Positions 31,451 through 47,742 of a stretch of DNA of 64,000 nt are shown piece by piece. The stretch spans positions 25,668,001 through 25,732,000 of the forward strand of contig NC_134480.1 of NCBI RefSeq assembly GCF_964194025.1, in the 5' to 3' direction. Origin of the DNA: Convolutriloba macropyga. Taxonomy: Eukaryota. Position 1 is the stretch's first letter. Each line of letters opens with the position of its first letter. Both the position numbers and the translations under genes were made by a program. The notes beneath the pieces were generated by a model. The model made no database searches. It saw only the letters and a program-made list of their open reading frames with translations, and was not told the origin of the DNA.

Positions 31451-33210
31451 CCCATTTGGATTTCTTGGGATTGAGGCCAATGGTACAATTTGCACTTGAT
31501 TCAAGGGTTGATTTGATTACCACAGAATCACTTTCAATTTTAATTTTCGTGAATATAAGAATGCCTGATTGTTTTTGATTTATGAAATATGAAGATTGTG
31601 CGGACATAAATATTATAGAATAGGACCAATTTCATCTTGAACTTAAAATAATGTTTAGGATATTTAATTCATTGAAATGTGACACATCAGATTTTGTAAT
31701 CATGTTTTAGTCACGTTTAGAGTTTCTAGTAGAACCTTGGATATACTTTCACAAAATCCGTGAAGTAGAGAAAAATGGGCAAGACGTAAAGTAATTAGGA
31801 AAGAATCTGATTAAATTTTGCGTCAAAATTTATATTGTATTGTTTGAGAGATCTATACCAAATAAAATTGAGCAAAGTCAAGACAAGTTATGTCAGCAAG
31901 ATAAACACTTGTTCTATTGTCAATAACCTAAGGCAGATGGATGTTAATTTTACATTGCTGCTTCTTCCCATCGCCAACTTTTAAATGTGCTGCTAATTAT
32001 GTAATGAAGTATCTGGTACTTATCAAATGTTTTTCAGGCCTTCGGATGTGGTTTTTGCGATTTCGAAAAACAACTATTTCAGTCATTCAAATGTTATGCT
32101 TTTCATCCGATAATATTTCATGCATTTTTAGACCAATATCATATTACTAAATATATTCAACAATGGCTCAATTTGAAGTCCCAGTCAAAGTTGAGACGTT
32201 ACATCAAGAGATTGTTTTTCATTGTATAAAAATTTTCTATAAGTTTCTGCATATTCGATATGAGTTTGCAGCACTTCATTGTTTTTGTTTGCTGAAATTT
32301 ATTCTCGGAATAAAGTAACTTGACCAGTGGTAACTTGAATTTTATTATAAATCCCTGATTGCTGTACTCATAGCAAATCTTCAGCAATGACTTTGATTTT
32401 GCTATATGTATTGCGTCGCGAATCATGAGCTTTGTGGCACATTGCATTGATCAACTACACGCCAATCACACTCCCGTTAAATGGCACTACATTCGTTTAC
32501 GTGCCGACCTGCCAGGAAGTCTGTTTTTTTATCCTTTGCCATCCGCAGGGTTATATGTCTTCAGGTCAGCCCAATTAGGTGGAATTTTATGAAAAAAAAT
32601 TAAAGAAGGTAAGTAGGTTTTGAAATTCCTTGTTGTGTAGATTACTGTAACATCTGTTAGTGATCCAGCTTTTATAGGCGCATGCTTAATTGGTTTCTCT
32701 ATTTCAGAAGAAATGGCTCTCCTACCGGTTTAGGTCAGTTTTCGAAATGTTTTCCGCTTCAGTTTTTGCGGTCTTTTTAGAGTCACTGAAATTTTTCTCA
32801 ATTGTCTGGTTAACAATGCTTGACGACAAATTTCTATGGATTTCTCCGCCATATGTTTTTGTTGATCATAAGGGTTTCATCAAAGTATTGCCGGTTGCTT
32901 CTATCAAACAATCCTATGTATAGTACCCTCGAAGGTATTTATATGCTTGAGTGGTGCGAAGCTGTGGGAATGTGTAAATGTTCCTGTTTCTGTTGATGTT
33001 AACTTTCGGTGCCATTTACACAGAACTTTTTTTATTCGTCCTTGTCGGGGATAACTATTTCACAGTTTTATCCATTTTTTGTGAAATCGATAGTTTTAAG
33101 CAAACTAGTTCCTAGTTGAATCAACTTCTTGGGGTTTGTTTCGTATGTGCAAATATTGTCTACATATCCTTCAAATAGTTCGTAATAATGTTTTCAGTGG
33201 TGTATTTCCA

Positions 33211-34880
33211 ATGTAAAAGAAACCGATTTGTCAAATTGAAATTACTTCAAACGTTTTCGAACTTTACGTTCATCGTCAGGTTAAAACTGTTTTTACAAAT
33301 TGTTAAAAGATAAAATAATTATGTGTTTACGTTTGTCTGAGACCACACTTAAAACAATTCTAGGAACTATTCTGAAAAATTCAATCAAAATTTGTTCGAT
33401 ATGTACAAAATTTAGCCTATTTACAACTCATATTTACATCCGTTATCAATTTATTTAAAAACATTCTTTTTCCGGATTTTTCAATTTCAGCCATGTTCTT
33501 GTATTTTTAGGGTTATTCTGAATTTGCCCTAAACTGAAGTTTACCTCTTGTGGAGGTTTTGCAAATTACGTTTTGTCATGCACAAAATGTTTTTTGGCCC
33601 TATGTATCTTCATCTAGTCAAAATTATAATTTGAACTAATATTTTAACGTGAGTTCCCGCTCCTATATTCATCATGTGTGTCTAGTGCCGGCTTCAGCTT
33701 GCTGATGTATATAGCTTCGATAATAATTAGTTTTTCTACCGTCTGACAGGCGTCCAGAATTTTTCATTCAATGTCATTCGTGGCGCCACGACATTCAACC
33801 AGATGTTGACCCACCTGTGAATCCTTCTTTTGATGTTCTGTTATCCTTGTGGTAACATGCCGGTTTGTTTGCCCAACATAGATGGATCCGCATCCATTAC
33901 GTTTAATCTAATATACCACGTAGGATTTCAGGTCTCCATCGAAAGCTGATTTCAGGGTGGGGAGGCATGATCTTAATTTCCGCGTCGTAAAAACCACTTG
34001 CAACTCGCATAGTTTCTTCAATTTGCTTGCAAAGCTTTGAGTAAGGTTGCCTCTGGATTTTAGAAAAATAGTTGGCTTATCATAAGATCCAGTGATGTTC
34101 TTTTGGTGTTGTTTTCAATTGGTCTTTCCCGCCACTTATTATCTTTTCTGGAGTCTGGTTCACTATTTTTGAAGACCAATCTTCTGGATATTGATTTTCC
34201 GTCCAGCAGGTTTTGTTCTTTTCAAGAGCCTGATCGAAGGCCAATCAATTAGAGGTTGCATTGAAAACCCTATGAACCGTCCCTTGAATCACATTTTGTT
34301 TATGCTGGAGCGATGCACAGCTGCGAAAATTCAGTTTTATTTCAATGTCAGTTGGTTTTTGATACCAATGACAGGTTACTTTACTTTTGCTGCTCACATT
34401 TACGTTAATTTGAAGAAAAGCCAGATTCCCTTCCATGTTAATTTTTTCTAAGGTAAATTGCAGGTTGTTGTCTAAAGAATTTGCAAATTTTAAATACTCG
34501 TCCGGGTCACCACGAACCGTGCAGATAATATCATCCACATAACTTTTATACAATTTCATCTCCTCATAACGCCCGACTATCTGTTGGTTGTTGCAATAAG
34601 TTCAAATCCAAAACACCCTTGATGTTGGTGTATTCCTCATTCGATATCTTTTGGAATCTTGCATGAAACCAGTTTTTGCATGACTCACATTCTACTCCGC
34701 TTCCTCAGAAAGTCATTCTCCGTTTACAGTCTTTGCACTTCCCCTTTTGGTGGGATCTGGAAATATTTTCATTGAGCTCTGGTTTTTGCAGTGATGCCTC
34801 AAACGATTTCATCCACACGTTTGTCAGTATTACAGCCAGTGATGCACCCATAGCCAGACCATCTCATTGTACTTCCACCT
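33211..34880 (-). mobile_element. Penelope-like element copy B (5'-truncated; RT C-half + GIY-YIG endonuclease + 3' pLTR)
   Basis: DGLAMGASLAVILTNVWMK, the PHD insert, YVDDI, NLQFTLE, WYQKPTD, YVGQTNRHVTTRITEH and EAIYISKLKPALDT. Flanked by the 10-bp direct repeat TGTATTTCCA at 33201-33210 and 34881-34890. Confidence 0.92.
33249..33279 (-). ncRNA. Hammerhead-ribozyme-like core in the PLE-B 3' pLTR (probably degenerate)
   Basis: Minus strand reads CUGACGA-U-GAAC-GUAAA-GUUC-GAAA-ACGUUU: core boxes, a 4-bp helix II and a palindromic AAACGUUU. Helix I pairing is not evident. Confidence 0.5.
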
Positions 34881-35461
34881 TGTATTTCCACCTTGAAAAC
34901 ATTTCCAAACATAATTATTCATTTTCCGTAGTGCTCCTTACTATTTTGACATTTTATGTGATACCAGTTTTCGCATTCAACTGCCTTGCTATTCCGAAGA
35001 ATTTTTTGACAGCCAGGGCATCTTTATGTCGCATTTTTGGTTCTCCAGAGGTCATCTCGTTCTCAGCACTCAGTTTGACTTCAAGGGATTTCATCCAAAT
35101 ATTGGGCAAGATAAATGCCAGGGAAGCCCCATTGCAAATCTTTGTATCAGTACCAGTTACCTTTTGAAAATAAGCGTTTGTGACTGGAAGTTTGAGTAGG
35201 AGCTTAATTGGTGCTCGTTCGATATCGGGGAGGGTGTCACTGGAGTAAAGACACCGCAGGGCGACTTCGATGGCTTCGTCAAAAAATGGTTTCATTTGTG
35301 ATAAGGACTTCCTTGAATAGATAAAATGGGGCGCGTTGGTGTCTTTTCTTTGTGGACTTTTTCCAACTCATACAGTCGAGCTGGTTGTGCTACTGTCGTT
35401 CGTACTTTTTGGTAATTTTATAATTTTTTCCGTAATTAGTTTTGTTTTTGTTCCATTGGAT

Positions 35462-35612
35462 CTATTCTGTTTTGCCCCCCCAGTGTTTTTTACGCCCCCC
35501 TACTTACAAATTATATGTTGTTATATAGTACGTTACTATGTAAAGAATTAGCACGTGCTTCTGGGGGGCGTAAAAAATATAAGCCCACTAAGCTGGGGGG
35601 GAAACAGAATAG
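35462..35612. mobile_element. 151-bp MITE inserted in PLE copy A
   Basis: TIRs ctattctgttt..cccccc(c)ag and ctgggggggaaacagaatag, with an internal inverted pair ttttttacgccccc / gggggcgtaaaaaa. Absent from the homologous position in PLE copy C. Confidence 0.85.
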
Positions 35613-35789
35613 ATTCTTTTCATTTCAAACTAAAGTTCCGTTTACATCTTTTTCTGTTTTGAAAATTATCTGGTCATTTTTTTCCACCCGCGAAAATTGG
35701 GGACAATCCAGTATATTTGATTGATATCTTGTTTTCAAAACACTGCCCTTATCAAAAGGTGTGGCTAAAAATGTAGATAACTTGATTTC

Positions 35790-38700: not shown

Positions 38701-39132
38701 AGTTGCCTGCTTTGCATTTGTTGATTCTCATGAAGCTTGGCTTCCAGTGAACGATTTCTTGGTAGATAGGAAGCAGGTCTTCTGGTTTTTCTAGCGCTGC
38801 CCAAAAATTTGTTCTGGTGTTTGTTGGCTTTGGGGGTTCACTGGGTTTTGAAAATTTGGGCGTACGTCTCCCGCTATGGCTTGGCCCGGTTCCGGGCCCC
38901 TCTCACAGCCAGCTTGCTCCTGAAGGTCACCAGGACCAACAAGCGAAGCAGAGTCTGGGCTAACTCGGGGAATCGCGGGCCTAAAACAGTATAAACAGAT
39001 CCACTCCACGTTTTTGGCTGTTTTCGAGACGTCTGCACATTTGATGTGGGCATATTCCTTGCATTTTTGACAGGGGACACTGTAGGAGTTGTGGTGAATA
39101 TTCTTTTTGCATATAATACAGTCCCATTTCAT
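35790..39132 (-). mobile_element. CRE-clade non-LTR retrotransposon (PHD - RT - CCHC - REL endonuclease) with a few stops and frameshifts
   Basis: GAHGPSG, RLIPLDKNPGVRPIGIGEVLRR, DATNAFN, QGDPLAM, WYNDD, CACG..SHALHC, RHNEVRD, RLDI...YDVKV and LSFALLRSTILCIRG. The N-terminal ORF 39132-38791 holds a C4HC3 finger. Confidence 0.92.
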
Positions 39133-40439: not shown

Positions 40440-41417
40440 AACTAAGATAAACAAAACAGAGTTTCTTGGAACATTGTGTGTCAATAAAACTAATTTCTGA
40501 AATTAAGTTTTCCAATTCATTTTTTATTTGATCTTTGAATTTAGATTTTTGAAGTTCTTAGTCACTGTCTACCGTTTCGTAACATTTTGGAACAATTCAA
40601 TGTTCCGGTTCGCTAAAATGTAATTTTTGAATTGAGCCAAATTACAACTGTTAACTAGTATTCCAATGTCAACTTCTGGCTTCAGTATTCATCGCACGTC
40701 TTCAGCATTGGCTTCCTTTGTGCTATATGCAATTTTTCGAGAGTCATCAGTTTTTGTGGCACATTGCACTAATCTATTATACGCCAATCAAACGCGCGTA
40801 ATTTGCCACAATATTCGCTTAAGAAAAGTGTTTGTCCCTCTGCTTTAGCTTATCGCTTGATTTGAATTTAGCTATTGTTTTGCGGTCCTTTTTGAGCAAC
40901 CTAAAAATTTTCCGATATAAAATGATAAACAAAACTAAGATAAACAAAACAGAGTTTCTTGGAACATTGTGTGTCAATAAAACTAATTTCTGAAATTAAG
41001 TTTTCCAATTCATTTTTTATTTGATCTTTGAATTTAGATTTTTGAAGTTCTTAGTCACTGTCTACCGTTTCGTAACATTTTGGAACAATTCAATGTTCCG
41101 GTTCGCTAAAATGTAATTTTTGAATTGAGCCAAATTACAACTGTTAACTAGTATTCCAATGTCAACTTCTGGCTTCAGTATTCATCGCACGTCTTCAGCA
41201 TTGGCTTCCTTTGTGCTATATGCATTTTTTCGAGAGTCATCAGTTTTTGTGGCACATTGCACTAATCTATTATACGCCAATCAAACGCGCGTAATTTGCC
41301 ACAATATTCGCTTAAGAAAAGTGTTTGTCCCTCTGCTTTAGCTTATCGCTTGATTTGAATTTAGCTATTGTTTTGCGGTCCTTTTTGAGCAACCTAAAAA
41401 TTTTCCGATATAAAATG
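40440..41417. repeat. Near-perfect tandem duplication, 493-bp period (40440-40924, 40933-41417)
   Basis: ORFs at 40666 and 41159 differ by one residue; only one mismatch was seen between copies. Confidence 0.97.
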
Positions 41418-42870
41418 CCTGACGAACAATTCGCTGGATAATGATTTTTTCACCATTTGGTTTCGTTGATTTTTAGGGCTTCGTAAATGTATTGCCAGTT
41501 GATGCTGGATCGAAATCGTCTACGGAAAGTACCCTCTACAATATTTTTCTTATGCTGGAGGGGAGTGCAGCTACGGAAATTAAGAATTGTTCCATTGTGT
41601 TGGCTTTTGGTACCATTTACGCCTCACTTGTCTTTGTTCATCAACGTAGACTGCCATATCCATAATGGCTAGTTCATGTTAATCCATTTTTTCCATTGTG
41701 AACTCCAAATCTTATGCAAATTGTTTTCTAGTTCAAGCAAATTATTGGGTTGGTCTTTTACTGTGCAAATATGTCATCTATATATCTTGAAAATAGTTTT
41801 TGTTTTCTCGTTTGGTTATCAGTTGATGAGTTTTCACATTCGAAGCATTTCCAAACATTCCCCTATTTTTTTGTATTGCTGCTTTCTTATATTTGGACAT
41901 TTTATGATACCAGCTCTCATTTTTTCGCACTCGACGGCTCTTCTATTCCAAACCACTTTTTTATGGCAGAAGGGGCATTTTTATTGGAATTATTTGTTTC
42001 GCCCAGCCTCATCTCATACTCAGCACTAAGTTTTTCCTCTAAAGTTTTCATCCAAATATTAGCCAAGATCTTTGCCAGGGAAGCCACCCATTGCCAAACC
42101 GTATTTTTGACAGTACCAGTTACCATTGTTTTTAGAATAACATCTGCGACTGCTAGTTTGAGTAGGAGCTTAAGTTTCGATCTTTCAATATTGGGAGGGG
42201 TGACACTGGAGTAAAGACATCGTAGAGCAATTTGATGGCTTCCGAGGCGTGGACAATAGTGTTTGAACTTTTGACATCTTGTAATACAATTCGCTCATTT
42301 GCCTCAAGCTCGTTTCAAGTCTTTTTCTAGCTATAAGACTCGAATTGTCGATGTTTGCTCCTGGCACCTTTTCAGAAAGTTGAGTAAAAATTTGTTTAAA
42401 TCGTAAGAGCTTCCAGGAATAGATAAAACAGAGCGCATTGGTGTGTTTTCTTTGTGAACTTCTGTCAACTCATACAGTCTCGTTGGTTGTGCGCCGGTTG
42501 TTCGTAATTTTTGATTATTTTTCCGTAATGAGATCTTGTTCATTTTAAAGTAAAGTTCCGTTTAAATCTTTTTGTACTTTGAGAATTATCTCGGCATTTT
42601 TTTGTCTCCAGTTTCGAAAAATGGGGCAGTCCAGTATTCTGTTCATTTTTGATTCTTTTGTTTTCATAACACAGAATGTGTTACCCTTATCTAAAGGTAC
42701 AGCTAAAAGATCGTTTTCTTTAAGAAATTTTGCCACCCTTGATAGTCCTCTGTCCGCCGGTGTCTTTTAATTTCTTAGCGTACTGTTTGGTGGATGCCTC
42801 TACCTCACAAAGCTTTTCACCGCAAACACCATTTTCTTTTATACTAACTAACCCGTCATATATCGTATAG
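40440..42870 (-). mobile_element. Penelope-like element copy C (decayed), with a tandemly duplicated 3' end
   Basis: LAVPLDKGN, GAQPTRLYELTEVHKENTPMRSVLS, GLAMG.ASLAKILANIWMK, the PHD insert, RYIDDI and the GIY-YIG C-terminus KLMTLEKLHIAQRKPMLKTCDEY. Confidence 0.88.
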
Positions 42871-43457: not shown

Positions 43458-43781
43458 ATGTTCCGCAGTGAAAGCGTTCTGAACAATGCTAATAATCCAG
43501 CCTTTAAAAAGAAGCTCTGTATTCATTTCGCCAAAGGACGATGTAATATAGGAGCCGAATGTGGTTTTGCGCATGGAAAAGACGAATTGCGTAATTTCGA
43601 AAATCCCGGATTTAAAGCACAGCTTTGTACAGCATACGATCAGGATGGAATTTGCGAGATGGGAATCGATTGCCTGTTCGCCCATGGGGAATCAGAGTTG
43701 AGAAATGACTCTCCTGGTCAACTGAATGGTATCACCGGCGTTATTAATGGAACTGCTGAGTTGAAGAAGGAAGCGTACAAG
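43458..43781 (+). CDS. Multi-CCCH zinc-finger protein, coding exon 1 (fingers 1-2)
   Basis: ATG in caaaaATG context. Encodes FKKKLC-x7-C-x5-C-x3-H and FKAQLC-x8-C-x5-C-x3-H. Phase-0 donor AAG|GTACAT. Confidence 0.88.
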
Positions 43782-44049
43782 GTACATAACCCTATTTAAC
43801 CCATAACATTGAATTGTAACCATGCTAAAATACGTTTACCTTGAATTTTTAAATTTAGGAANNNNNNNNNNNNNNNNNNNNNNNNNNNNNNNNNNNNNNN
43901 NNNNNNNNNNNNNNNNNNNNNNNNNNNNNNNNNNNNNNNNNNNNNNNNNNNNNNNNNNNNNNNNNNNNNNNNNNNNNNNNNNNNNNNNNNNNNNNNNNNN
44001 NNNNNNNNNNNNNNNNNATAATTATTATTAGGACTTTCACAAAAGTGCG

Positions 44050-45600
44050 GGACATCTCCCGTTCTTATTTACAGTTATAGGTCATTATTTCAGTTAACTC
44101 TTAAAATTCTCGGCGACGTGCGACAGCAATCACATAAGCAAATGAACGTCCAAGTACATATGTCTGATTCGTTGAAATAATCGTGACAGTAATTCCACAT
44201 GATTTTGAGCAGAATGTTTTTCAGCCCTGCAGGCTCGCTTAGTTTAACAAAAGTTGAAAGCAAATTTGATCGATAAGCAGTCCTGTAGAAGGAATTTGAG
44301 CGCTGAACCTTCCGTTTTATTTTGGGCAGAACGAAAGAATTTCTTGGCATTCTGTCTGATGTTGAGACTTCTAAGTAAGCAGTATAGACAATATCGTACC
44401 TGCCTATGACAATTTTTGATTAGAGAAGATCAGATAATACTAAAAATTAGCCAAAAGGTAACAAATTAAGATACAATAGTCTTTCTTTATAACTTAAATT
44501 GGGAATTATCCACTTCGTAGTATCTCTGTGAAATATTTCCAAGTTCCTCATGTCTGTTTTTGACATGTAACGATTGGACGCATAAGTGACAATCAGAATA
44601 AGCGTACTTTTCGGTTGAATTTGGCTGAGATTGTGAGTTCACTGGGACGTACATTCAGGCTTCTGCGTGCTGGCTCCAAGATAAATCACTTTGCACAGTA
44701 AGAGCAAGATCTTCGACGGACTTTTCATGTTTAGGGATTGATTTGCCCAGATGAACTTGCATCTTAGGCGCTTTATTAAAGCTAATAATATGACATTTCT
44801 TAAGATTAATATTGATGTTGCTTTCATAACCCCATTGGTAAATCGAATCCAAGTCAAGCTGAGCGCGATAGCAGTCACCCAAATGTTCATTGTACAAAAG
44901 CTTTGAATCATCAGCAAACATGTTAACAGTGGAATGATAAATAACGTTCGGTAGATCATTTATGAGTATAAGGAATAGCAGGGGCCCCAATATGGCTCCC
45001 GAAGTAATAGCTGATGACTCTGAACAACAATCTTGTACTTTAACGAATTGTCATCTATTCGTTAGGTAAATTTCTATAAGCTTCAGTAGTTGTCCACCTA
45101 CCCCAGTTTTTGATAGCTTGAAGATACCGAGTAAACCGTGGTCTATCTTGTCGAAAGTTTTTAGAAAAGTCAAAAAGAAAAAAAGAAACCTCTTGCGAAT
45201 TGTTTTCAATGGCTTCAAAATATCACTGAGATAACATATCAGTTGTAAGATAACGGAACGCCGTTCTCTGAACCCGAATTGAGCATTGTTAACATATATT
45301 ATTGAGGAAATGACGATAGATTAAAATAAATTAGCTTTTTCAATATTTTCGATATGATGTATAGTAGAGTTACCGGAGGATAGGTTTCGATATCGGCTTT
45401 TGTTCTTTCCTTTTTAAAAAATTGGACTAACAGCTCCTATTTTCCATTGTTTTGGAAAAACTGAAAGATGTCTAATATTTCTGAATAAATTTTTAATCCA
45501 GCTAGCTAACTCAGAACGGCATTTTTTAAGAAAAGCAGCTGGTAGATTGTCCGGACCACAACTTTTCTTCTCGTCAACTTTGCTGAGTTCATAGTAGAGA
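44050..45600 (-). mobile_element. Decayed CR1-like LINE 3' half inside intron 1 of the CCCH gene
   Basis: KSCGPDNLP, AQFGFR, FDKIDH and GPLLFLILINDLP...FADDSK, plus a Cys-rich C-terminus. Confidence 0.88.
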
Positions 45601-45774
45601 CATCAATACTTTTTTAATCATATGCAACATTATGATTAAAATCGAATAAAACTTTGCCGATAACCGGTAGCGGTTGACCCGTTGGATAAAGACCAGTAGC
45701 TGGTCTTTATCTACGAACTTCAATGGATGATATCTTATTGCTTGTTATTGATGATGGTGATTTTTGTTGTATAG

Positions 45775-46135
45775 AGCTCGTTATGTATCCACTTCATGCG
45801 ATCTGGATCGTGCAAAGTTGGAACCGGCTGTGCTTTTGCTCATGGAAAAGAAGACCTGGTAAACGCAAAGTCCCCTGACACGAGCGACCCCAAGTACAAA
45901 ACGAAGCTTTGTATTCGTTTCGAGCAGGACTCTTTTTGTCCCAATGGAGATGGGTGCGTGTTTGCACACGGGGAACTGGAACTGCGAGAGGCCCAGGGAA
46001 GTGGAGGAGGCAAAAGTGCCTCACTGTTCAAAACTTCCCTCTGCCATAACTTCACCACTTTGGGTGTATGTCCCAACGGAAAAAACTGCTCATTTGCACA
46101 CGGAAGATACGAACTCAGACCAGTCGGATTTGATG
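45775..46135 (+). CDS. Multi-CCCH protein, exon 2 (fingers 3-5)
   Basis: Acceptor gttgtatag|AGC restores YK|SSLC. Contains the YKTKLC and FKTSLC fingers. Phase-1 donor G|GTATGT. Confidence 0.9.
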
Positions 46136-46320
46136 GTATGTGCATCCATATTTTTGCCAACGTGAATATTATTAATTACTCTTGAAACAAAGTTTGTAAA
46201 TAAGCTTTCTTGTTTTTTGTTCTGTAACAAATGAAAACGAAGGATTGGAGACACCAATTAATGATATTTGCATAAATGTAAATTTTTATTAGTTCTTAGG
46301 TTTCACGAATTTAATTTTAG

Positions 46321-46776
46321 GAGATTTCGATGCCAAAATAGCAGAAAACCGTAAATGGAAATGCACCCTTTGTAACATATTCCAACAAGCCGGACGATGT
46401 AACCGGACCAGCTGCGACTATGCACATGGTGAAGAAGAGTTGAGAAGTGAAAATCCGGAACCTCAACAGCCCAAAGCCAAGGGCAACTTCAAAACAGTTC
46501 TGTGCAAAAATTTCCAAGCGAGAGGATTTTGTTTTCATGAAGATTCTTGCAACTTTGCTCACGGAGAAGTGGAGCTCAATCAGGCCAAAGACGCCCTGAC
46601 TACAATGAAAATGCTGAGAAAACGACCGAAAGAAGAAATGCACATGAACGGGAAAGGAGGAGCAAGTGTTGCAACTGGTGCCAATGCAGTTGCACCTGCA
46701 GCTTCTGGATTTGATCAGAAGTTGTTCGCAGAATTTCTAGAGTTCAAGAAGTTTAAACAGCAGTCAGAAAGTACAG
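46321..46776 (+). CDS. Multi-CCCH protein, exon 3 (fingers 6-7)
   Basis: Acceptor aattttag|GA (phase 1). Encodes WKCTLC-x8-C-x4-C-x3-H and FKTVLC-x8-C-x5-C-x3-H. The donor is either the GT at 46771 or the GC at 46777, both phase 1. Confidence 0.87.
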
Positions 46777-47166
46777 GCAAGTTTTTTTGTCATATGTAAG
46801 AAGGACCAACTGATGTAGTTCGGAAAATCAGTTTACTCTTACAACTATTCGGAAATACATTCCTGATATTCTATTCCATGACACCGCTCAATAAGCTGAT
46901 TTTCAAGCGTTATTTTTAAAAAAAAGTATGTTTTTATTCTTGACTGGAAATTTTGATCATGTGACTTGCCTCTCACCATAAAATTGGCTTCTGTAGTCAT
47001 CGGTGGACAACTGATACTGAGAAAAGAGGGCCTGTGTTAAAATGAGCCGTGTGCATCCAATGTAAGACCTATCTCAGGCTTTATCACTTCAATTCATTGA
47101 CTAGTTTGAGTTCATAAACAGGTTCAGTTGCAGAAACACTAAGTTAATCAGTTTTACTAGCTATCA

Positions 47167-47298
47167 ACCACCGATTGGTATTTCACTTCTGAGCTGCCCA
47201 GGATGAGGTGTGCGACCCAAGCCACCTCTCATCAGAATGACTTGCGTCGGGCATCTCATCCTGGGTGTCCTTTGTGGCTATTTGTCAATCCGGTGGCT
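47167..47298. mobile_element. Short palindromic MITE-like element in intron 3
   Basis: Inverted pairs cccaggatgag / ctcatcctggg and ccaccgattg / caatccggtgg. The left arm resembles 20764-20810. Confidence 0.6.
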
Positions 47299-47398
47299 GT
47301 TTTTTAGTGTATTAAATTTCAATAACAATGTTTTGGAATAACATTGAGTAAATAAACATATCTTTGATCATCAGAGTTGAGCGAGCTGTTCGTTTTAG

Positions 47399-47742
47399 CC
47401 GCGCCTTCTGGTCCTACGTCATTTTATCCCTCTGGGCCGACAACCCCTGCAAAAAATAAGCAGCAAAACATGCAGTACCCGACTCCTGTGCCCCCGACCA
47501 CCTCAGTAGCTGAAATGGAAACCCAGGGCTACTACCAAGGCGGGTTCCAGACTACAAATATGGGCAACTCGAACGGAATGCACACTTCGGGATACCACTA
47601 CTCTCAACCAATGGGTGCCTATAACGCACGGTACGGTGGAACCAACCAGGCATTCGGTGGAAGTAATGCCGCATATGGTGGAACAGACGGGTTTGCAAGC
47701 CGACGTATTGGCGATCGTATGCATTCAGATTACGGATTCTAA
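47399..47742 (+). CDS. Multi-CCCH protein, last exon (P/T-rich then G/Y/N/Q low-complexity tail)
   Basis: Acceptor gttttag|CC is phase-compatible with exon 3, and the frame is open to TAA at 47740-47742. Confidence 0.72.

What the first reader, a model, noticed from the sequence alone, without database searches (positions are those of the whole stretch)
41773..42100. Second, diverged PLE (copy C) has the same intra-RT PHD finger
Seen: reading through small indels gives GLAMG-ASLAKILANIWMKTLEEKL...KCPFCHKKVVWNRRAVECEK(C)ESWYH.KCPNIRKQQYKKIG.NVWKCFECEN...LFSRYIDDI. The PHD spans 41836-41977 at the same position as in copy B. The DNA and linker residues are strongly diverged from copy B, while the Cys/His/Trp pattern is kept. 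Inference: the insert is an old, selected feature of the lineage rather than a one-off insertion.
Basis: partly seen in the sequence, partly recalled or inferred. Interest (0 to 1): 0.75.

Follow-up and report, generated by a model that had tools for sequence, protein, structure and literature searches.

The report
Dead Penelope element keeps PHD finger
This is a long-dead copy of a Penelope-like jumping gene whose copying enzyme carries a zinc-binding PHD finger in its catalytic core; a whole branch of these elements inherited the finger once and kept it under selection, but its function is untested.

Summary
On the minus strand, 42857-41151 is a decayed Penelope-like element (PLE), copy C, with 13 frameshifts and 4 stops. 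A PHD-type stretch lies at 41977-41836, between RT motif B (GLAMG/ASLAKILANIWM) and motif C (YIDD). Seven of the eight zinc ligands and both hallmark Trp are readable; ligand 4 is lost at a frameshift.

The inference also holds, but on evidence from intact relatives. Thirty canonical PLE proteins have a fixed 33-residue B-to-C spacing. All 46 distinct PHD-bearing segments have 95-121 residues. On an RT tree built without the insert, canonical PLEs are one side of a 100/100 branch and all PHD-bearing elements are on the other. Copy C groups with other dead copies of its family, next to intact P0226 and then to the copy B family. Across 15 intact lineages, seven of the eight ligand positions and both Trp never vary. 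Other insert columns carry 2-3 bits of entropy. A PHD-only tree repeats the RT groupings.

Copy C itself is a fossil: dead copies of its family keep only 42 of 61 ligand positions. The modelled fold matches Pygopus and MLL PHD fingers.

This scan has noted the same feature many times elsewhere in this genome. I found no published description for animal elements.

The parts
41151..42857 (-). Copy C: a decayed Penelope-like element (N-terminal region, RT with PHD insert, thumb, GIY-YIG remnant)
   Evidence: tblastn with P0147, P0226, P0143 and P0163. Frameshift-aware alignment to P0226: 51% identity, 13 frameshifts, 4 stops.
42451..42498 (-). RT motif 1/2 region (TGAQPTRLYELTEVHK)
42267..42290 (-). 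RT motif A remnant (IVLQDVKS; intact relatives have IVSLDVKSLYTNVP)
   Evidence: P0013 and P0226 for the intact form
42046..42103 (-). RT motif B (YGLAMG, a frameshift, then ASLAKILANIWMK)
41981..42045 (-). Upstream linker of the insert, variable between families
   Evidence: alignment; entropy of 2.5-3.2 bits
41836..41977 (-). PHD finger remnant. Ligands 1, 2, 3, 5 (His), 6, 7 and 8 and both Trp are readable. Ligand 4 is lost at a frameshift. There are three frameshifts inside the finger.
41788..41835 (-). Downstream linker of the insert
41773..41787 (-). RT motif C (RYIDD)
41546..41593 (-). Thumb region (GTILNFRSCTPLQHKK)
41151..41321 (-). C-terminal GIY-YIG endonuclease remnant; the stretch between thumb and endonuclease is shortened or unrecognisable
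   Evidence: P0226 residues 500-556, 49% identity
40440..40924 (-). Second unit of a 493-bp tandem duplication of the 3' part of copy C (duplicate of 40933-41417, 99.8% identical)
   Evidence: blastn; the endonuclease remnant repeats at 40828-40658
34885..35786 (-). Copy C2, 5' part: a second C-family copy, running from the N-terminal region to the end of its PHD
   Evidence: blastn to copy C at 72-80% identity
32265..33180 (-). Copy C2, 3' part (motif C onward), separated from the 5' part by the insertion of copy B
   Evidence: blastn collinear with copy C 41798-41079
33647..34872 (-). Copy B: a 5'-truncated PLE of the P0147 family, nested inside C2, with its own PHD
   Evidence: 343/410 identical to P0147, 3 frameshifts, 6 stops

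Best explanation
Copy C is a molecular fossil. It is a dead member of an old family (the C family), for which I found no intact member. The family belongs to a clade of Penelope-like retrotransposons whose RT carries a PHD zinc finger. The finger sits on two flexible linkers in the loop between the motif B helix and the motif C (YxDD) hairpin. Shown: the insert was gained once at the base of this clade, was inherited vertically with the RT, and is kept by purifying selection on its eight zinc ligands and two Trp while the elements are active. After a copy dies, the ligand codons decay only slightly more slowly than the rest of the sequence. Inferred, about 35-40% likely: the finger is a tethered protein-binding module of the Pygopus/MLL/BPTF type. 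It would dock the RT-endonuclease particle on a histone tail or another chromatin protein during target-primed reverse transcription, and so bias where or how efficiently the element integrates. Nothing here tests what it binds. The confidence given (0.85) is for the shown part (identity, single origin, selection), not for the inferred mechanism.
For: Identity: alignment to P0226 and P0147 across RT, thumb and endonuclease. Insert position and size: 30 canonical PLEs have a fixed 33-residue spacing from motif B to motif C, against 95-121 residues in all 46 distinct PHD-bearing segments. Single origin: on the RT tree built without insert columns, canonical PLEs form one side of a 100/100 branch. 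The C family (99/83) is sister to P0226 (100/95), and that pair is sister to the B family (97/91). Co-inheritance: the PHD-only tree recovers the same groups (98/99, 95/96, 89/81), and Mantel r = 0.67 with 0 of 5000 permutations as high. Selection: seven of the eight ligand columns and both Trp are invariant in 15 intact lineages, and ligand 1 is Cys in 14 of 15, against 2-3 bits of entropy in most other insert columns. Dead copies keep 42 of 61 ligand positions. PHD identity: Pfam PF00628 scores 28.5 bits against a cutoff of 24 on P0033. The AF2 model of the insert has pLDDT of about 90 in its core. Its top Foldseek hits are all PHD fingers at 1.0-1.7 A rmsd. The best sequence match in the PDB is the Pygo2 PHD, E = 1.7e-9. 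Tethering: low-confidence linkers flank the finger in the whole-protein model, and linker length varies between lineages. Activity of relatives: P0143 (859 aa) stands for 242 member sequences and P0147 for 104.
Against: No binding, zinc or retrotransposition data exist. The residue before ligand 1, which is aromatic in the Pygopus chains aligned, is not conserved here, so the methyl-lysine pocket may be incomplete. Some lineages vary the last ligand pair: Cys-x-Cys in six, Cys-x2-His in the P0163 family, and one family lacks ligand 1. Hosts of most relatives are unnamed ENA assemblies, so breadth beyond acoels is not shown. The tree is unrooted, so 'one gain' assumes that the root lies on or beyond the canonical branch. 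Only the 30 nearest canonical PLEs were sampled.
Confidence: 0.85

Rival explanations
1. The fingers of the B and C families are independent, convergent or recently exchanged insertions at the same RT loop, and not an ancestral feature.
For: PHD fingers have been inserted more than once in PLEs: Chlamys elements carry them between RT2a and RT3(A) or inside the endonuclease (PMC8557442). Flanking linkers of the B and C families are only 7-10% identical.
Against: The insertion point is the same in every lineage. All PHD-bearing elements lie on one side of a 100/100 branch. The PHD tree repeats the RT tree, and PHD non-ligand divergence tracks RT divergence.
Confidence: 0.04
2. The finger is kept only as a structural zinc module, or binds nucleic acid (template RNA, primer or target DNA) beside the active site. 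On this reading it is not a chromatin or protein reader.
For: It sits inside the catalytic domain next to motif C. The only invariant positions are the ligands and two Trp, plus near-invariant Val, Ser and Glu, so no obvious peptide-binding surface is conserved. The position before ligand 1 is not conserved. Some lineages change the last ligand pair.
Against: Canonical PLE RTs function without it, with a fixed 33-residue spacing. Long, variable, low-confidence linkers suggest an autonomous tethered domain and not a packed structural element. The closest sequence and fold relatives are histone-tail readers. The invariant Trp in the W-[FY]-H stretch aligns with the Trp of the WFH stretch in Pygopus fingers. 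From general knowledge, that Trp lines the methyl-lysine pocket.
Confidence: 0.3
3. The Cys/His pattern in copy C is a reading artefact: it was assembled from three frames by choice, or it comes from assembly errors in a live gene.
For: The finger must be read through three frameshifts, ligand 4 is missing, and no Pfam model reaches threshold on the pieces.
Against: The same frame path is forced by alignment to intact proteins over about 430 residues. A second copy, C2, reads the W-Y-H-x2-C segment in a single frame. Nine other C-family copies show the same insert with different lesions. Copy C also has 4 stops, an internal loss between thumb and endonuclease, and 72-80% DNA identity to C2. 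That is real age and not sequencing error.
Confidence: 0.02

Closest known systems
Chlamys Penelope-like elements of Chlamydomonas with PHD insertions (Craig et al. 2021, PMC8557442)
   Same: A PLE whose single ORF carries a PHD finger inserted within the RT or the endonuclease.
   Different: Chlamys elements have an N-terminal endonuclease and occur in green algae. Their PHD lies between RT2a and RT3(A) or inside the endonuclease, in five families. Here the elements have a C-terminal endonuclease and are animal-type, the finger lies between motifs B and C, and it defines a whole clade.
Canonical C-terminal-endonuclease PLEs (Penelope/Poseidon type)
   Same: N-terminal region, RT motifs, thumb and a GIY-YIG endonuclease with Cys inside the core. 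They are 33-42% identical to the PHD-bearing proteins.
   Different: The spacing from motif B to motif C is fixed at 33 residues with no finger. Motif B reads GLAMGSPPAPHLANGW instead of G[LV]AMGASLAVILANLW. They are separated by a long 100/100 branch.
Pygopus, MLL and BPTF PHD fingers (histone H3 tail readers)
   Same: C4HC3 ligand spacing, W-[FY]-H before ligand 6 and Trp two residues before ligand 7. The fold matches at 1.0-1.7 A. The best PDB sequence match is Pygo2, E = 1.7e-9. Precomputed PF27108 PHD_Pygo hits were also listed.
   Different: The finger is embedded in a polymerase loop. The position before ligand 1 is not conserved. No BCL9-type partner or histone binding was tested.
Chromodomain-bearing integrases of chromoviruses, and PHD fingers in CR1 non-LTR elements and Rehavkus transposons
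   Same: Mobile elements that carry a chromatin-reader module thought or shown to steer integration. CR1 and Rehavkus are cited in PMC8557442; the chromovirus case is from general knowledge.
   Different: Those modules are terminal appendages and not inserts in the catalytic core of the RT.
Insertion in fingers domain (IFD) of telomerase RT and of Naiad/Chlamys PLEs
   Same: A lineage-specific insertion inside the RT core of the PLE/TERT lineage (PMC8557442).
   Different: The IFD lies between motifs A and B, is not a zinc finger and packs against the RT. This insert lies between motifs B and C and is an autonomous PHD fold on linkers.

Membership tests
Penelope-like element (C-terminal endonuclease type) | RT with PLE-type motifs, with PLE RTs as nearest relatives | tested here: met
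   Copy C aligns to P0226 over about 430 residues at 51% identity. It sits inside a PLE tree. The modelled RT fold matches group II intron, retron, TERT and LINE-1 RTs.
Penelope-like element (C-terminal endonuclease type) | C-terminal GIY-YIG endonuclease with Cys residues inside the GIY-YIG core | tested here: met
   Copy C keeps only a remnant at 41321-41151, 49% identical to P0226 residues 500-556. Intact relatives carry PF01541 (precomputed) and the stretch VVYEISCSGCESTYVGQT. A piece of copy B matches PF01541 at E = 0.012, below the cutoff.
Penelope-like element (C-terminal endonuclease type) | Hammerhead ribozyme in pseudo-LTRs | tested here: inconclusive
   No Rfam family reached its gathering score anywhere in the window. 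The copies are old and no pseudo-LTR was delimited. Some PLE clades lack canonical hammerheads (PMC8557442).
PHD finger (PF00628) | C4HC3 zinc ligands with spacing C-x2-C-x(9-21)-C-x(2-4)-C-x(4-5)-H-x2-C-x(12-46)-C-x2-C | tested here: met
   Intact relatives show the full pattern in 33 of 46 distinct segments. The others are single-ligand lesions or lineage variants of the last pair. Copy C has 7 of 8 ligands at the right spacing, with ligand 4 lost at a frameshift.
PHD finger (PF00628) | Conserved Trp two residues before ligand 7 | tested here: met
   Invariant in 14 of 14 intact lineages that have the column, and present in copy C as VWKCFEC.
PHD finger (PF00628) | Profile match above the curated cutoff | tested here: met
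   P0033 scores 28.5 bits against a cutoff of 24. P0086 scores 19.5 bits, below the cutoff. Copy C's own pieces give no PHD hit, and a piece of copy B scores 16.8 bits. The test is therefore met for the lineage and not for the fossil alone.
PHD finger (PF00628) | PHD fold | tested here: met
   The AF2 model of P0226 residues 144-255 with 19 sequences has pLDDT of about 90 in its core. The top 50 Foldseek PDB hits are all PHD fingers, with target-normalised TM-score up to 0.81 and rmsd 1.0-1.7 A.
PHD finger (PF00628) | Binds two zinc ions; binds a histone tail or other ligand | not testable with these tools
   This needs protein biochemistry.
PHD-bearing PLE clade (as delimited here) | An insert of 62-88 residues between motif B and motif C, and placement on the PHD side of the 100/100 branch | tested here: met
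   Copy C has the insert at the same columns and sits in the clade, sister to P0226.

The most novel reading that the evidence does not exclude
The RT-embedded PHD finger is a chromatin reader. It docks the Penelope RT-endonuclease particle on a specific histone-tail state and so chooses integration sites. That would be the first case of a reader domain built into the catalytic core of a reverse transcriptase. It was gained once, possibly by capture of a host Pygopus-like finger, and it founded a successful clade in acoels and in other, still unnamed marine hosts.
Probability: 0.3. Interest if true: 0.8.

Novelty: new variant of a known kind. Interest (0 to 1): 0.5.

Why it matters
Accessory chromatin-reader modules are one of the few known ways in which retrotransposons choose their targets. 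For Penelope-like elements, target choice is almost unstudied. A PHD finger kept by selection inside the RT palm of a whole clade gives a concrete and testable handle. Intact, abundant relatives exist in the same genome (P0143 and P0147). Ligand mutants, histone-peptide binding and insertion-site profiling are all feasible. The fixed 33-residue spacing against 95-121 residues is also a simple diagnostic for annotating this clade. Copy C itself has no function. Its value is as a dated fossil: it shows that the finger was already present in an old family with no intact member found, and it shows what neutral decay of the finger looks like.

Tried and rejected
1. Selenocysteine or a shared-stop master. 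The ligand-4 codon is TGA in L007 and TAA in L001, which recalled the Naiad selenoproteins (PMC8557442). More copies showed TGT (L011), TGC (L010), TTT (L012) and TCT (L008). These are independent lesions, so the idea was rejected.

2. An intact C-family protein. An HMMER search of 1.84 billion representatives with copy C's 125-residue piece found only 20 fragments of 207 aa or less. The nearest intact relative, P0226, comes from another sample.

3. Naming the hosts. Cluster look-ups gave no names. Sequencing-run names are coded and no run is on record as RNA. A region-limited search with the Tara-derived P0162 gave only 7 unnamed hits. The only NCBI names seen were Symsagittifera roscoffensis for PHD-clade fragments and Hydractinia for a canonical PLE.

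4. Hammerhead ribozymes. No Rfam hit was found in the window.

6. Model coordinates are not exposed, so I could not measure where the finger sits relative to the active site.

7. Literature. Searches for Penelope-like with PHD, PHD finger, Pygopus or acoel found only the Chlamys case.

Broken copies were read through with X or marks at each break.

Full report
**What is there.** The window is AT-rich eukaryotic DNA, about 33-36% GC. Three-frame translation of the minus strand between 42860 and 41150 shows pieces of a Penelope-like element (PLE) reverse transcriptase. A frameshift-aware protein-to-DNA alignment against the nearest intact relative, P0226, gives 218 identities in 429 aligned residues (51%), with 13 frameshifts and 4 stops.

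The landmarks are:
- RT motif 1/2 at 42498-42451
- motif A remnant at 42290-42267
- motif B at 42103-42046
- PHD ligand codons from 41977 to 41836
- motif C (RYIDD) at 41787-41773
- thumb at 41593-41546
- GIY-YIG remnant at 41321-41151

One qualification applies. The fourth ligand falls at a frameshift and is not readable, so seven of the eight ligands and both hallmark Trp are present. The PHD piece of copy C alone reaches no Pfam threshold.

**Context in the window.** blastn of copy C against the window shows a second copy of the same family, C2. It is 72-80% identical at 35770-34885, and its alignment resumes collinearly at 33180-32265. The 1.7 kb between these two parts is copy B. Copy B is a 5'-truncated element that is 84% identical in protein to P0147, with 3 frameshifts and 6 stops. 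Copy B is thus nested in C2 and is younger than C2. The 3' part of copy C carries a 493-bp tandem duplication at 99.8% identity. No other PLE copy of these families is in the window. No Rfam family, hammerheads included, reaches threshold.

**Relatives.** An HMMER search of 1.84 billion representative proteins with copy C's best 125-residue piece returned only 20 short fragments. One of them is the window's own C2 ORF. The fragments that reach the linker begin the same finger (KCPxCHKK). Fetching their loci gave seven more C-family copies and one close relative, L010. All of them are dead, with up to 10 frameshifts and 1-8 stops each. All carry the insert or a remnant: L009 has an internal deletion and L006 a rearrangement. 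I found no intact member of the family.

Iterated searches from a better-preserved element in L002 reached intact proteins:
- P0143: 859 aa, a cluster of 242 sequences
- P0147: 708 aa, 104 sequences, the copy B family
- several lineages only 40-50% identical to the query P0086: P0162, P0163, P0167, P0168, P0170, P0173, P0176, P0181 and P0184
- P0226: the nearest intact relative of copy C

The only source names are Symsagittifera roscoffensis (an acoel) on some fragments and Hydractinia on a canonical PLE. P0162 comes from a Tara Oceans marine metagenome contig, and P0226 comes from another sample. The host of the window is therefore probably S. roscoffensis or a close relative. The published genome has 36.7% GC (PMC9911081). 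I could not confirm the host, because run and organism names are coded.

**The insert is a clade character.** In 30 canonical PLE proteins, the distance from the motif B glycine to the R of RY[VM]DD is fixed at 33 residues. In all 46 distinct PHD-bearing segments it is 95-121 residues. The alignment places the extra 62-88 residues at one point in every lineage, copies C, C2 and B included.

I built an RT tree on 320 columns with the insert columns removed. Canonical PLEs form one side of a 100/100 branch and every PHD-bearing sequence lies on the other. The C family (99/83) is sister to P0226 (100/95). That pair is sister to P0147 plus copy B (97/91). Next comes the P0143 group (100/99), and then deeper lineages. 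The tree is unrooted, so a single gain assumes that the root lies on or beyond the canonical branch.

**Selection and co-inheritance.** Across 15 intact lineages, whose mean RT identity is 54%, seven of the eight ligand columns and both Trp are invariant. Ligand 1 is Cys in 14 of 15 proteins, and the ligand-8 column is empty in P0163. Most other insert columns carry 2-3 bits of entropy, and mean non-ligand identity in the finger is 23%.

PHD non-ligand identity tracks RT identity (Mantel r = 0.67, with 0 of 5000 permutations as high). A tree of the finger alone recovers the RT groupings: crown group plus P0286 at 98/99, the P0143 trio at 95/96, and P0226 with copy C and L007 at 89/81.

The dead C-family copies behave differently. 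They keep only 42 of 61 ligand positions. Their pairwise identity is 62% at ligands and Trp, 51% in the RT and 47% at other finger positions. Copy C's 7 of 8 is therefore what neutral decay allows. The case for selection rests on the intact lineages.

**Is it a PHD finger?** Pfam PF00628 passes its cutoff on P0033 (28.5 bits against 24). An AlphaFold2 model of the region from motif B to motif C of P0226 has pLDDT of about 90 across the finger. Its best Foldseek PDB matches are all PHD fingers: MLL3 PHD6, Pygopus, MLL1 PHD3 and BPTF, at rmsd 1.0-1.7 A. A profile of the insert finds Pygopus 2 as the best solved sequence (E = 1.7e-9). Precomputed annotations list PF27108 PHD_Pygo.

In the whole-protein model, the order of elements is:
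- the motif B helices at residues 150-168
- a low-confidence linker
- the finger at 186-234
- a second low-confidence linker
- the motif C hairpin at 249-260

The RT part of the model matches group II intron, retron, telomerase and LINE-1 RTs.

**Mechanism.** It is shown that the finger is an autonomous PHD fold on variable linkers in the loop between motifs B and C. It is also shown that canonical PLE RTs do without it and that it is selectively maintained. It is inferred, at roughly 35-40%, that it docks the RT-endonuclease particle on a histone tail or a chromatin protein during target-primed reverse transcription.

Points for this inference are the closest relatives, which are histone-tail readers, and the invariant W-[FY]-H Trp. 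That Trp aligns with the Trp of the WFH stretch in Pygopus fingers; its role in the methyl-lysine pocket is from general knowledge. Points against are that the position before ligand 1 is not conserved and that no binding data exist. The main rival, at about 30%, is a structural or nucleic-acid-binding role next to the active site.

**Known or new.** Craig et al. 2021 (PMC8557442) describe PHD insertions in five Chlamys families of Chlamydomonas. Those insertions lie at other positions (RT2a-RT3(A), or inside the endonuclease), and the paper's domain scheme for animal PLEs shows none. Further full-text searches found nothing on a finger between motifs B and C in animal PLEs. The searchable library lacks most subscription journals and Repbase reports.

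The scan's own notes record this same feature in many other windows of this genome, and for copy B in this window. My tests agree with those notes. They add the clade-wide spacing rule, the insert-free RT tree, the PHD-RT congruence, the neutral-decay contrast and the nested B-in-C2 structure.

**Limits.** Hosts of most relatives are unnamed. Broken copies were read through with marks at each break.

Noticed in passing
window 32265-35786: Nested structure. Copy B (34872-33647, plus its 3' tail down to about 33181) is inserted into a C-family copy, C2, just after C2's PHD. C2's alignment to copy C resumes collinearly at 33180. The B family was therefore active after C2 had inserted.
   Followed up: partly
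window 40440-41417: A 493-bp tandem duplication of the 3' (endonuclease remnant) part of copy C. The two units are 99.8% identical, although the element itself is old (72-80% identity to C2). This points to a recent duplication, gene conversion or an assembly artefact, and not to a pseudo-LTR formed at insertion.
   Followed up: no
window 38791-39132 (-): The ORF that begins a neighbouring retrotransposon (noted by the scan as CRE-clade) starts with a PHD finger: PF00628 at 23.6 bits, just under the cutoff of 24. The finger aligns weakly (30% identity) with the PLE finger. Two retrotransposon classes in this genome carry PHD fingers.
   Followed up: partly
P0021 (493 aa, 40 member sequences): A variant of the P0143 family in which motif B and the upstream linker are deleted, so that WYV joins directly to the finger (…WYVHKNGLCPCCSRKV…). 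It may be an amplified deletion derivative.
   Followed up: no
P0162, P0167, P0289, P0259, P0299, P0181; P0163 family; P0173 family: Deep PHD-bearing lineages vary the last ligand pair: Cys-x-Cys instead of Cys-x2-Cys, or Cys-x2-His in the P0163 family. The P0173 family lacks ligand 1 and the second Trp. The finger's zinc site 2 is evolving within the clade.
   Followed up: no
window 43458-47742 (+): A run of ORFs encoding tandem CCCH zinc fingers (C-x8-C-x5-C-x3-H type, for example CIHFAKGRCNIGAECGFAHG). This is probably exons of a host gene next to copy C. An N-run at 43862-44017 interrupts the region and was left unfilled.
   Followed up: no
window 41676-42214 (+): Two open frames of 117 and 154 aa run antisense to copy C. 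They have no family match and low-complexity composition, and are almost certainly spurious.
   Followed up: no
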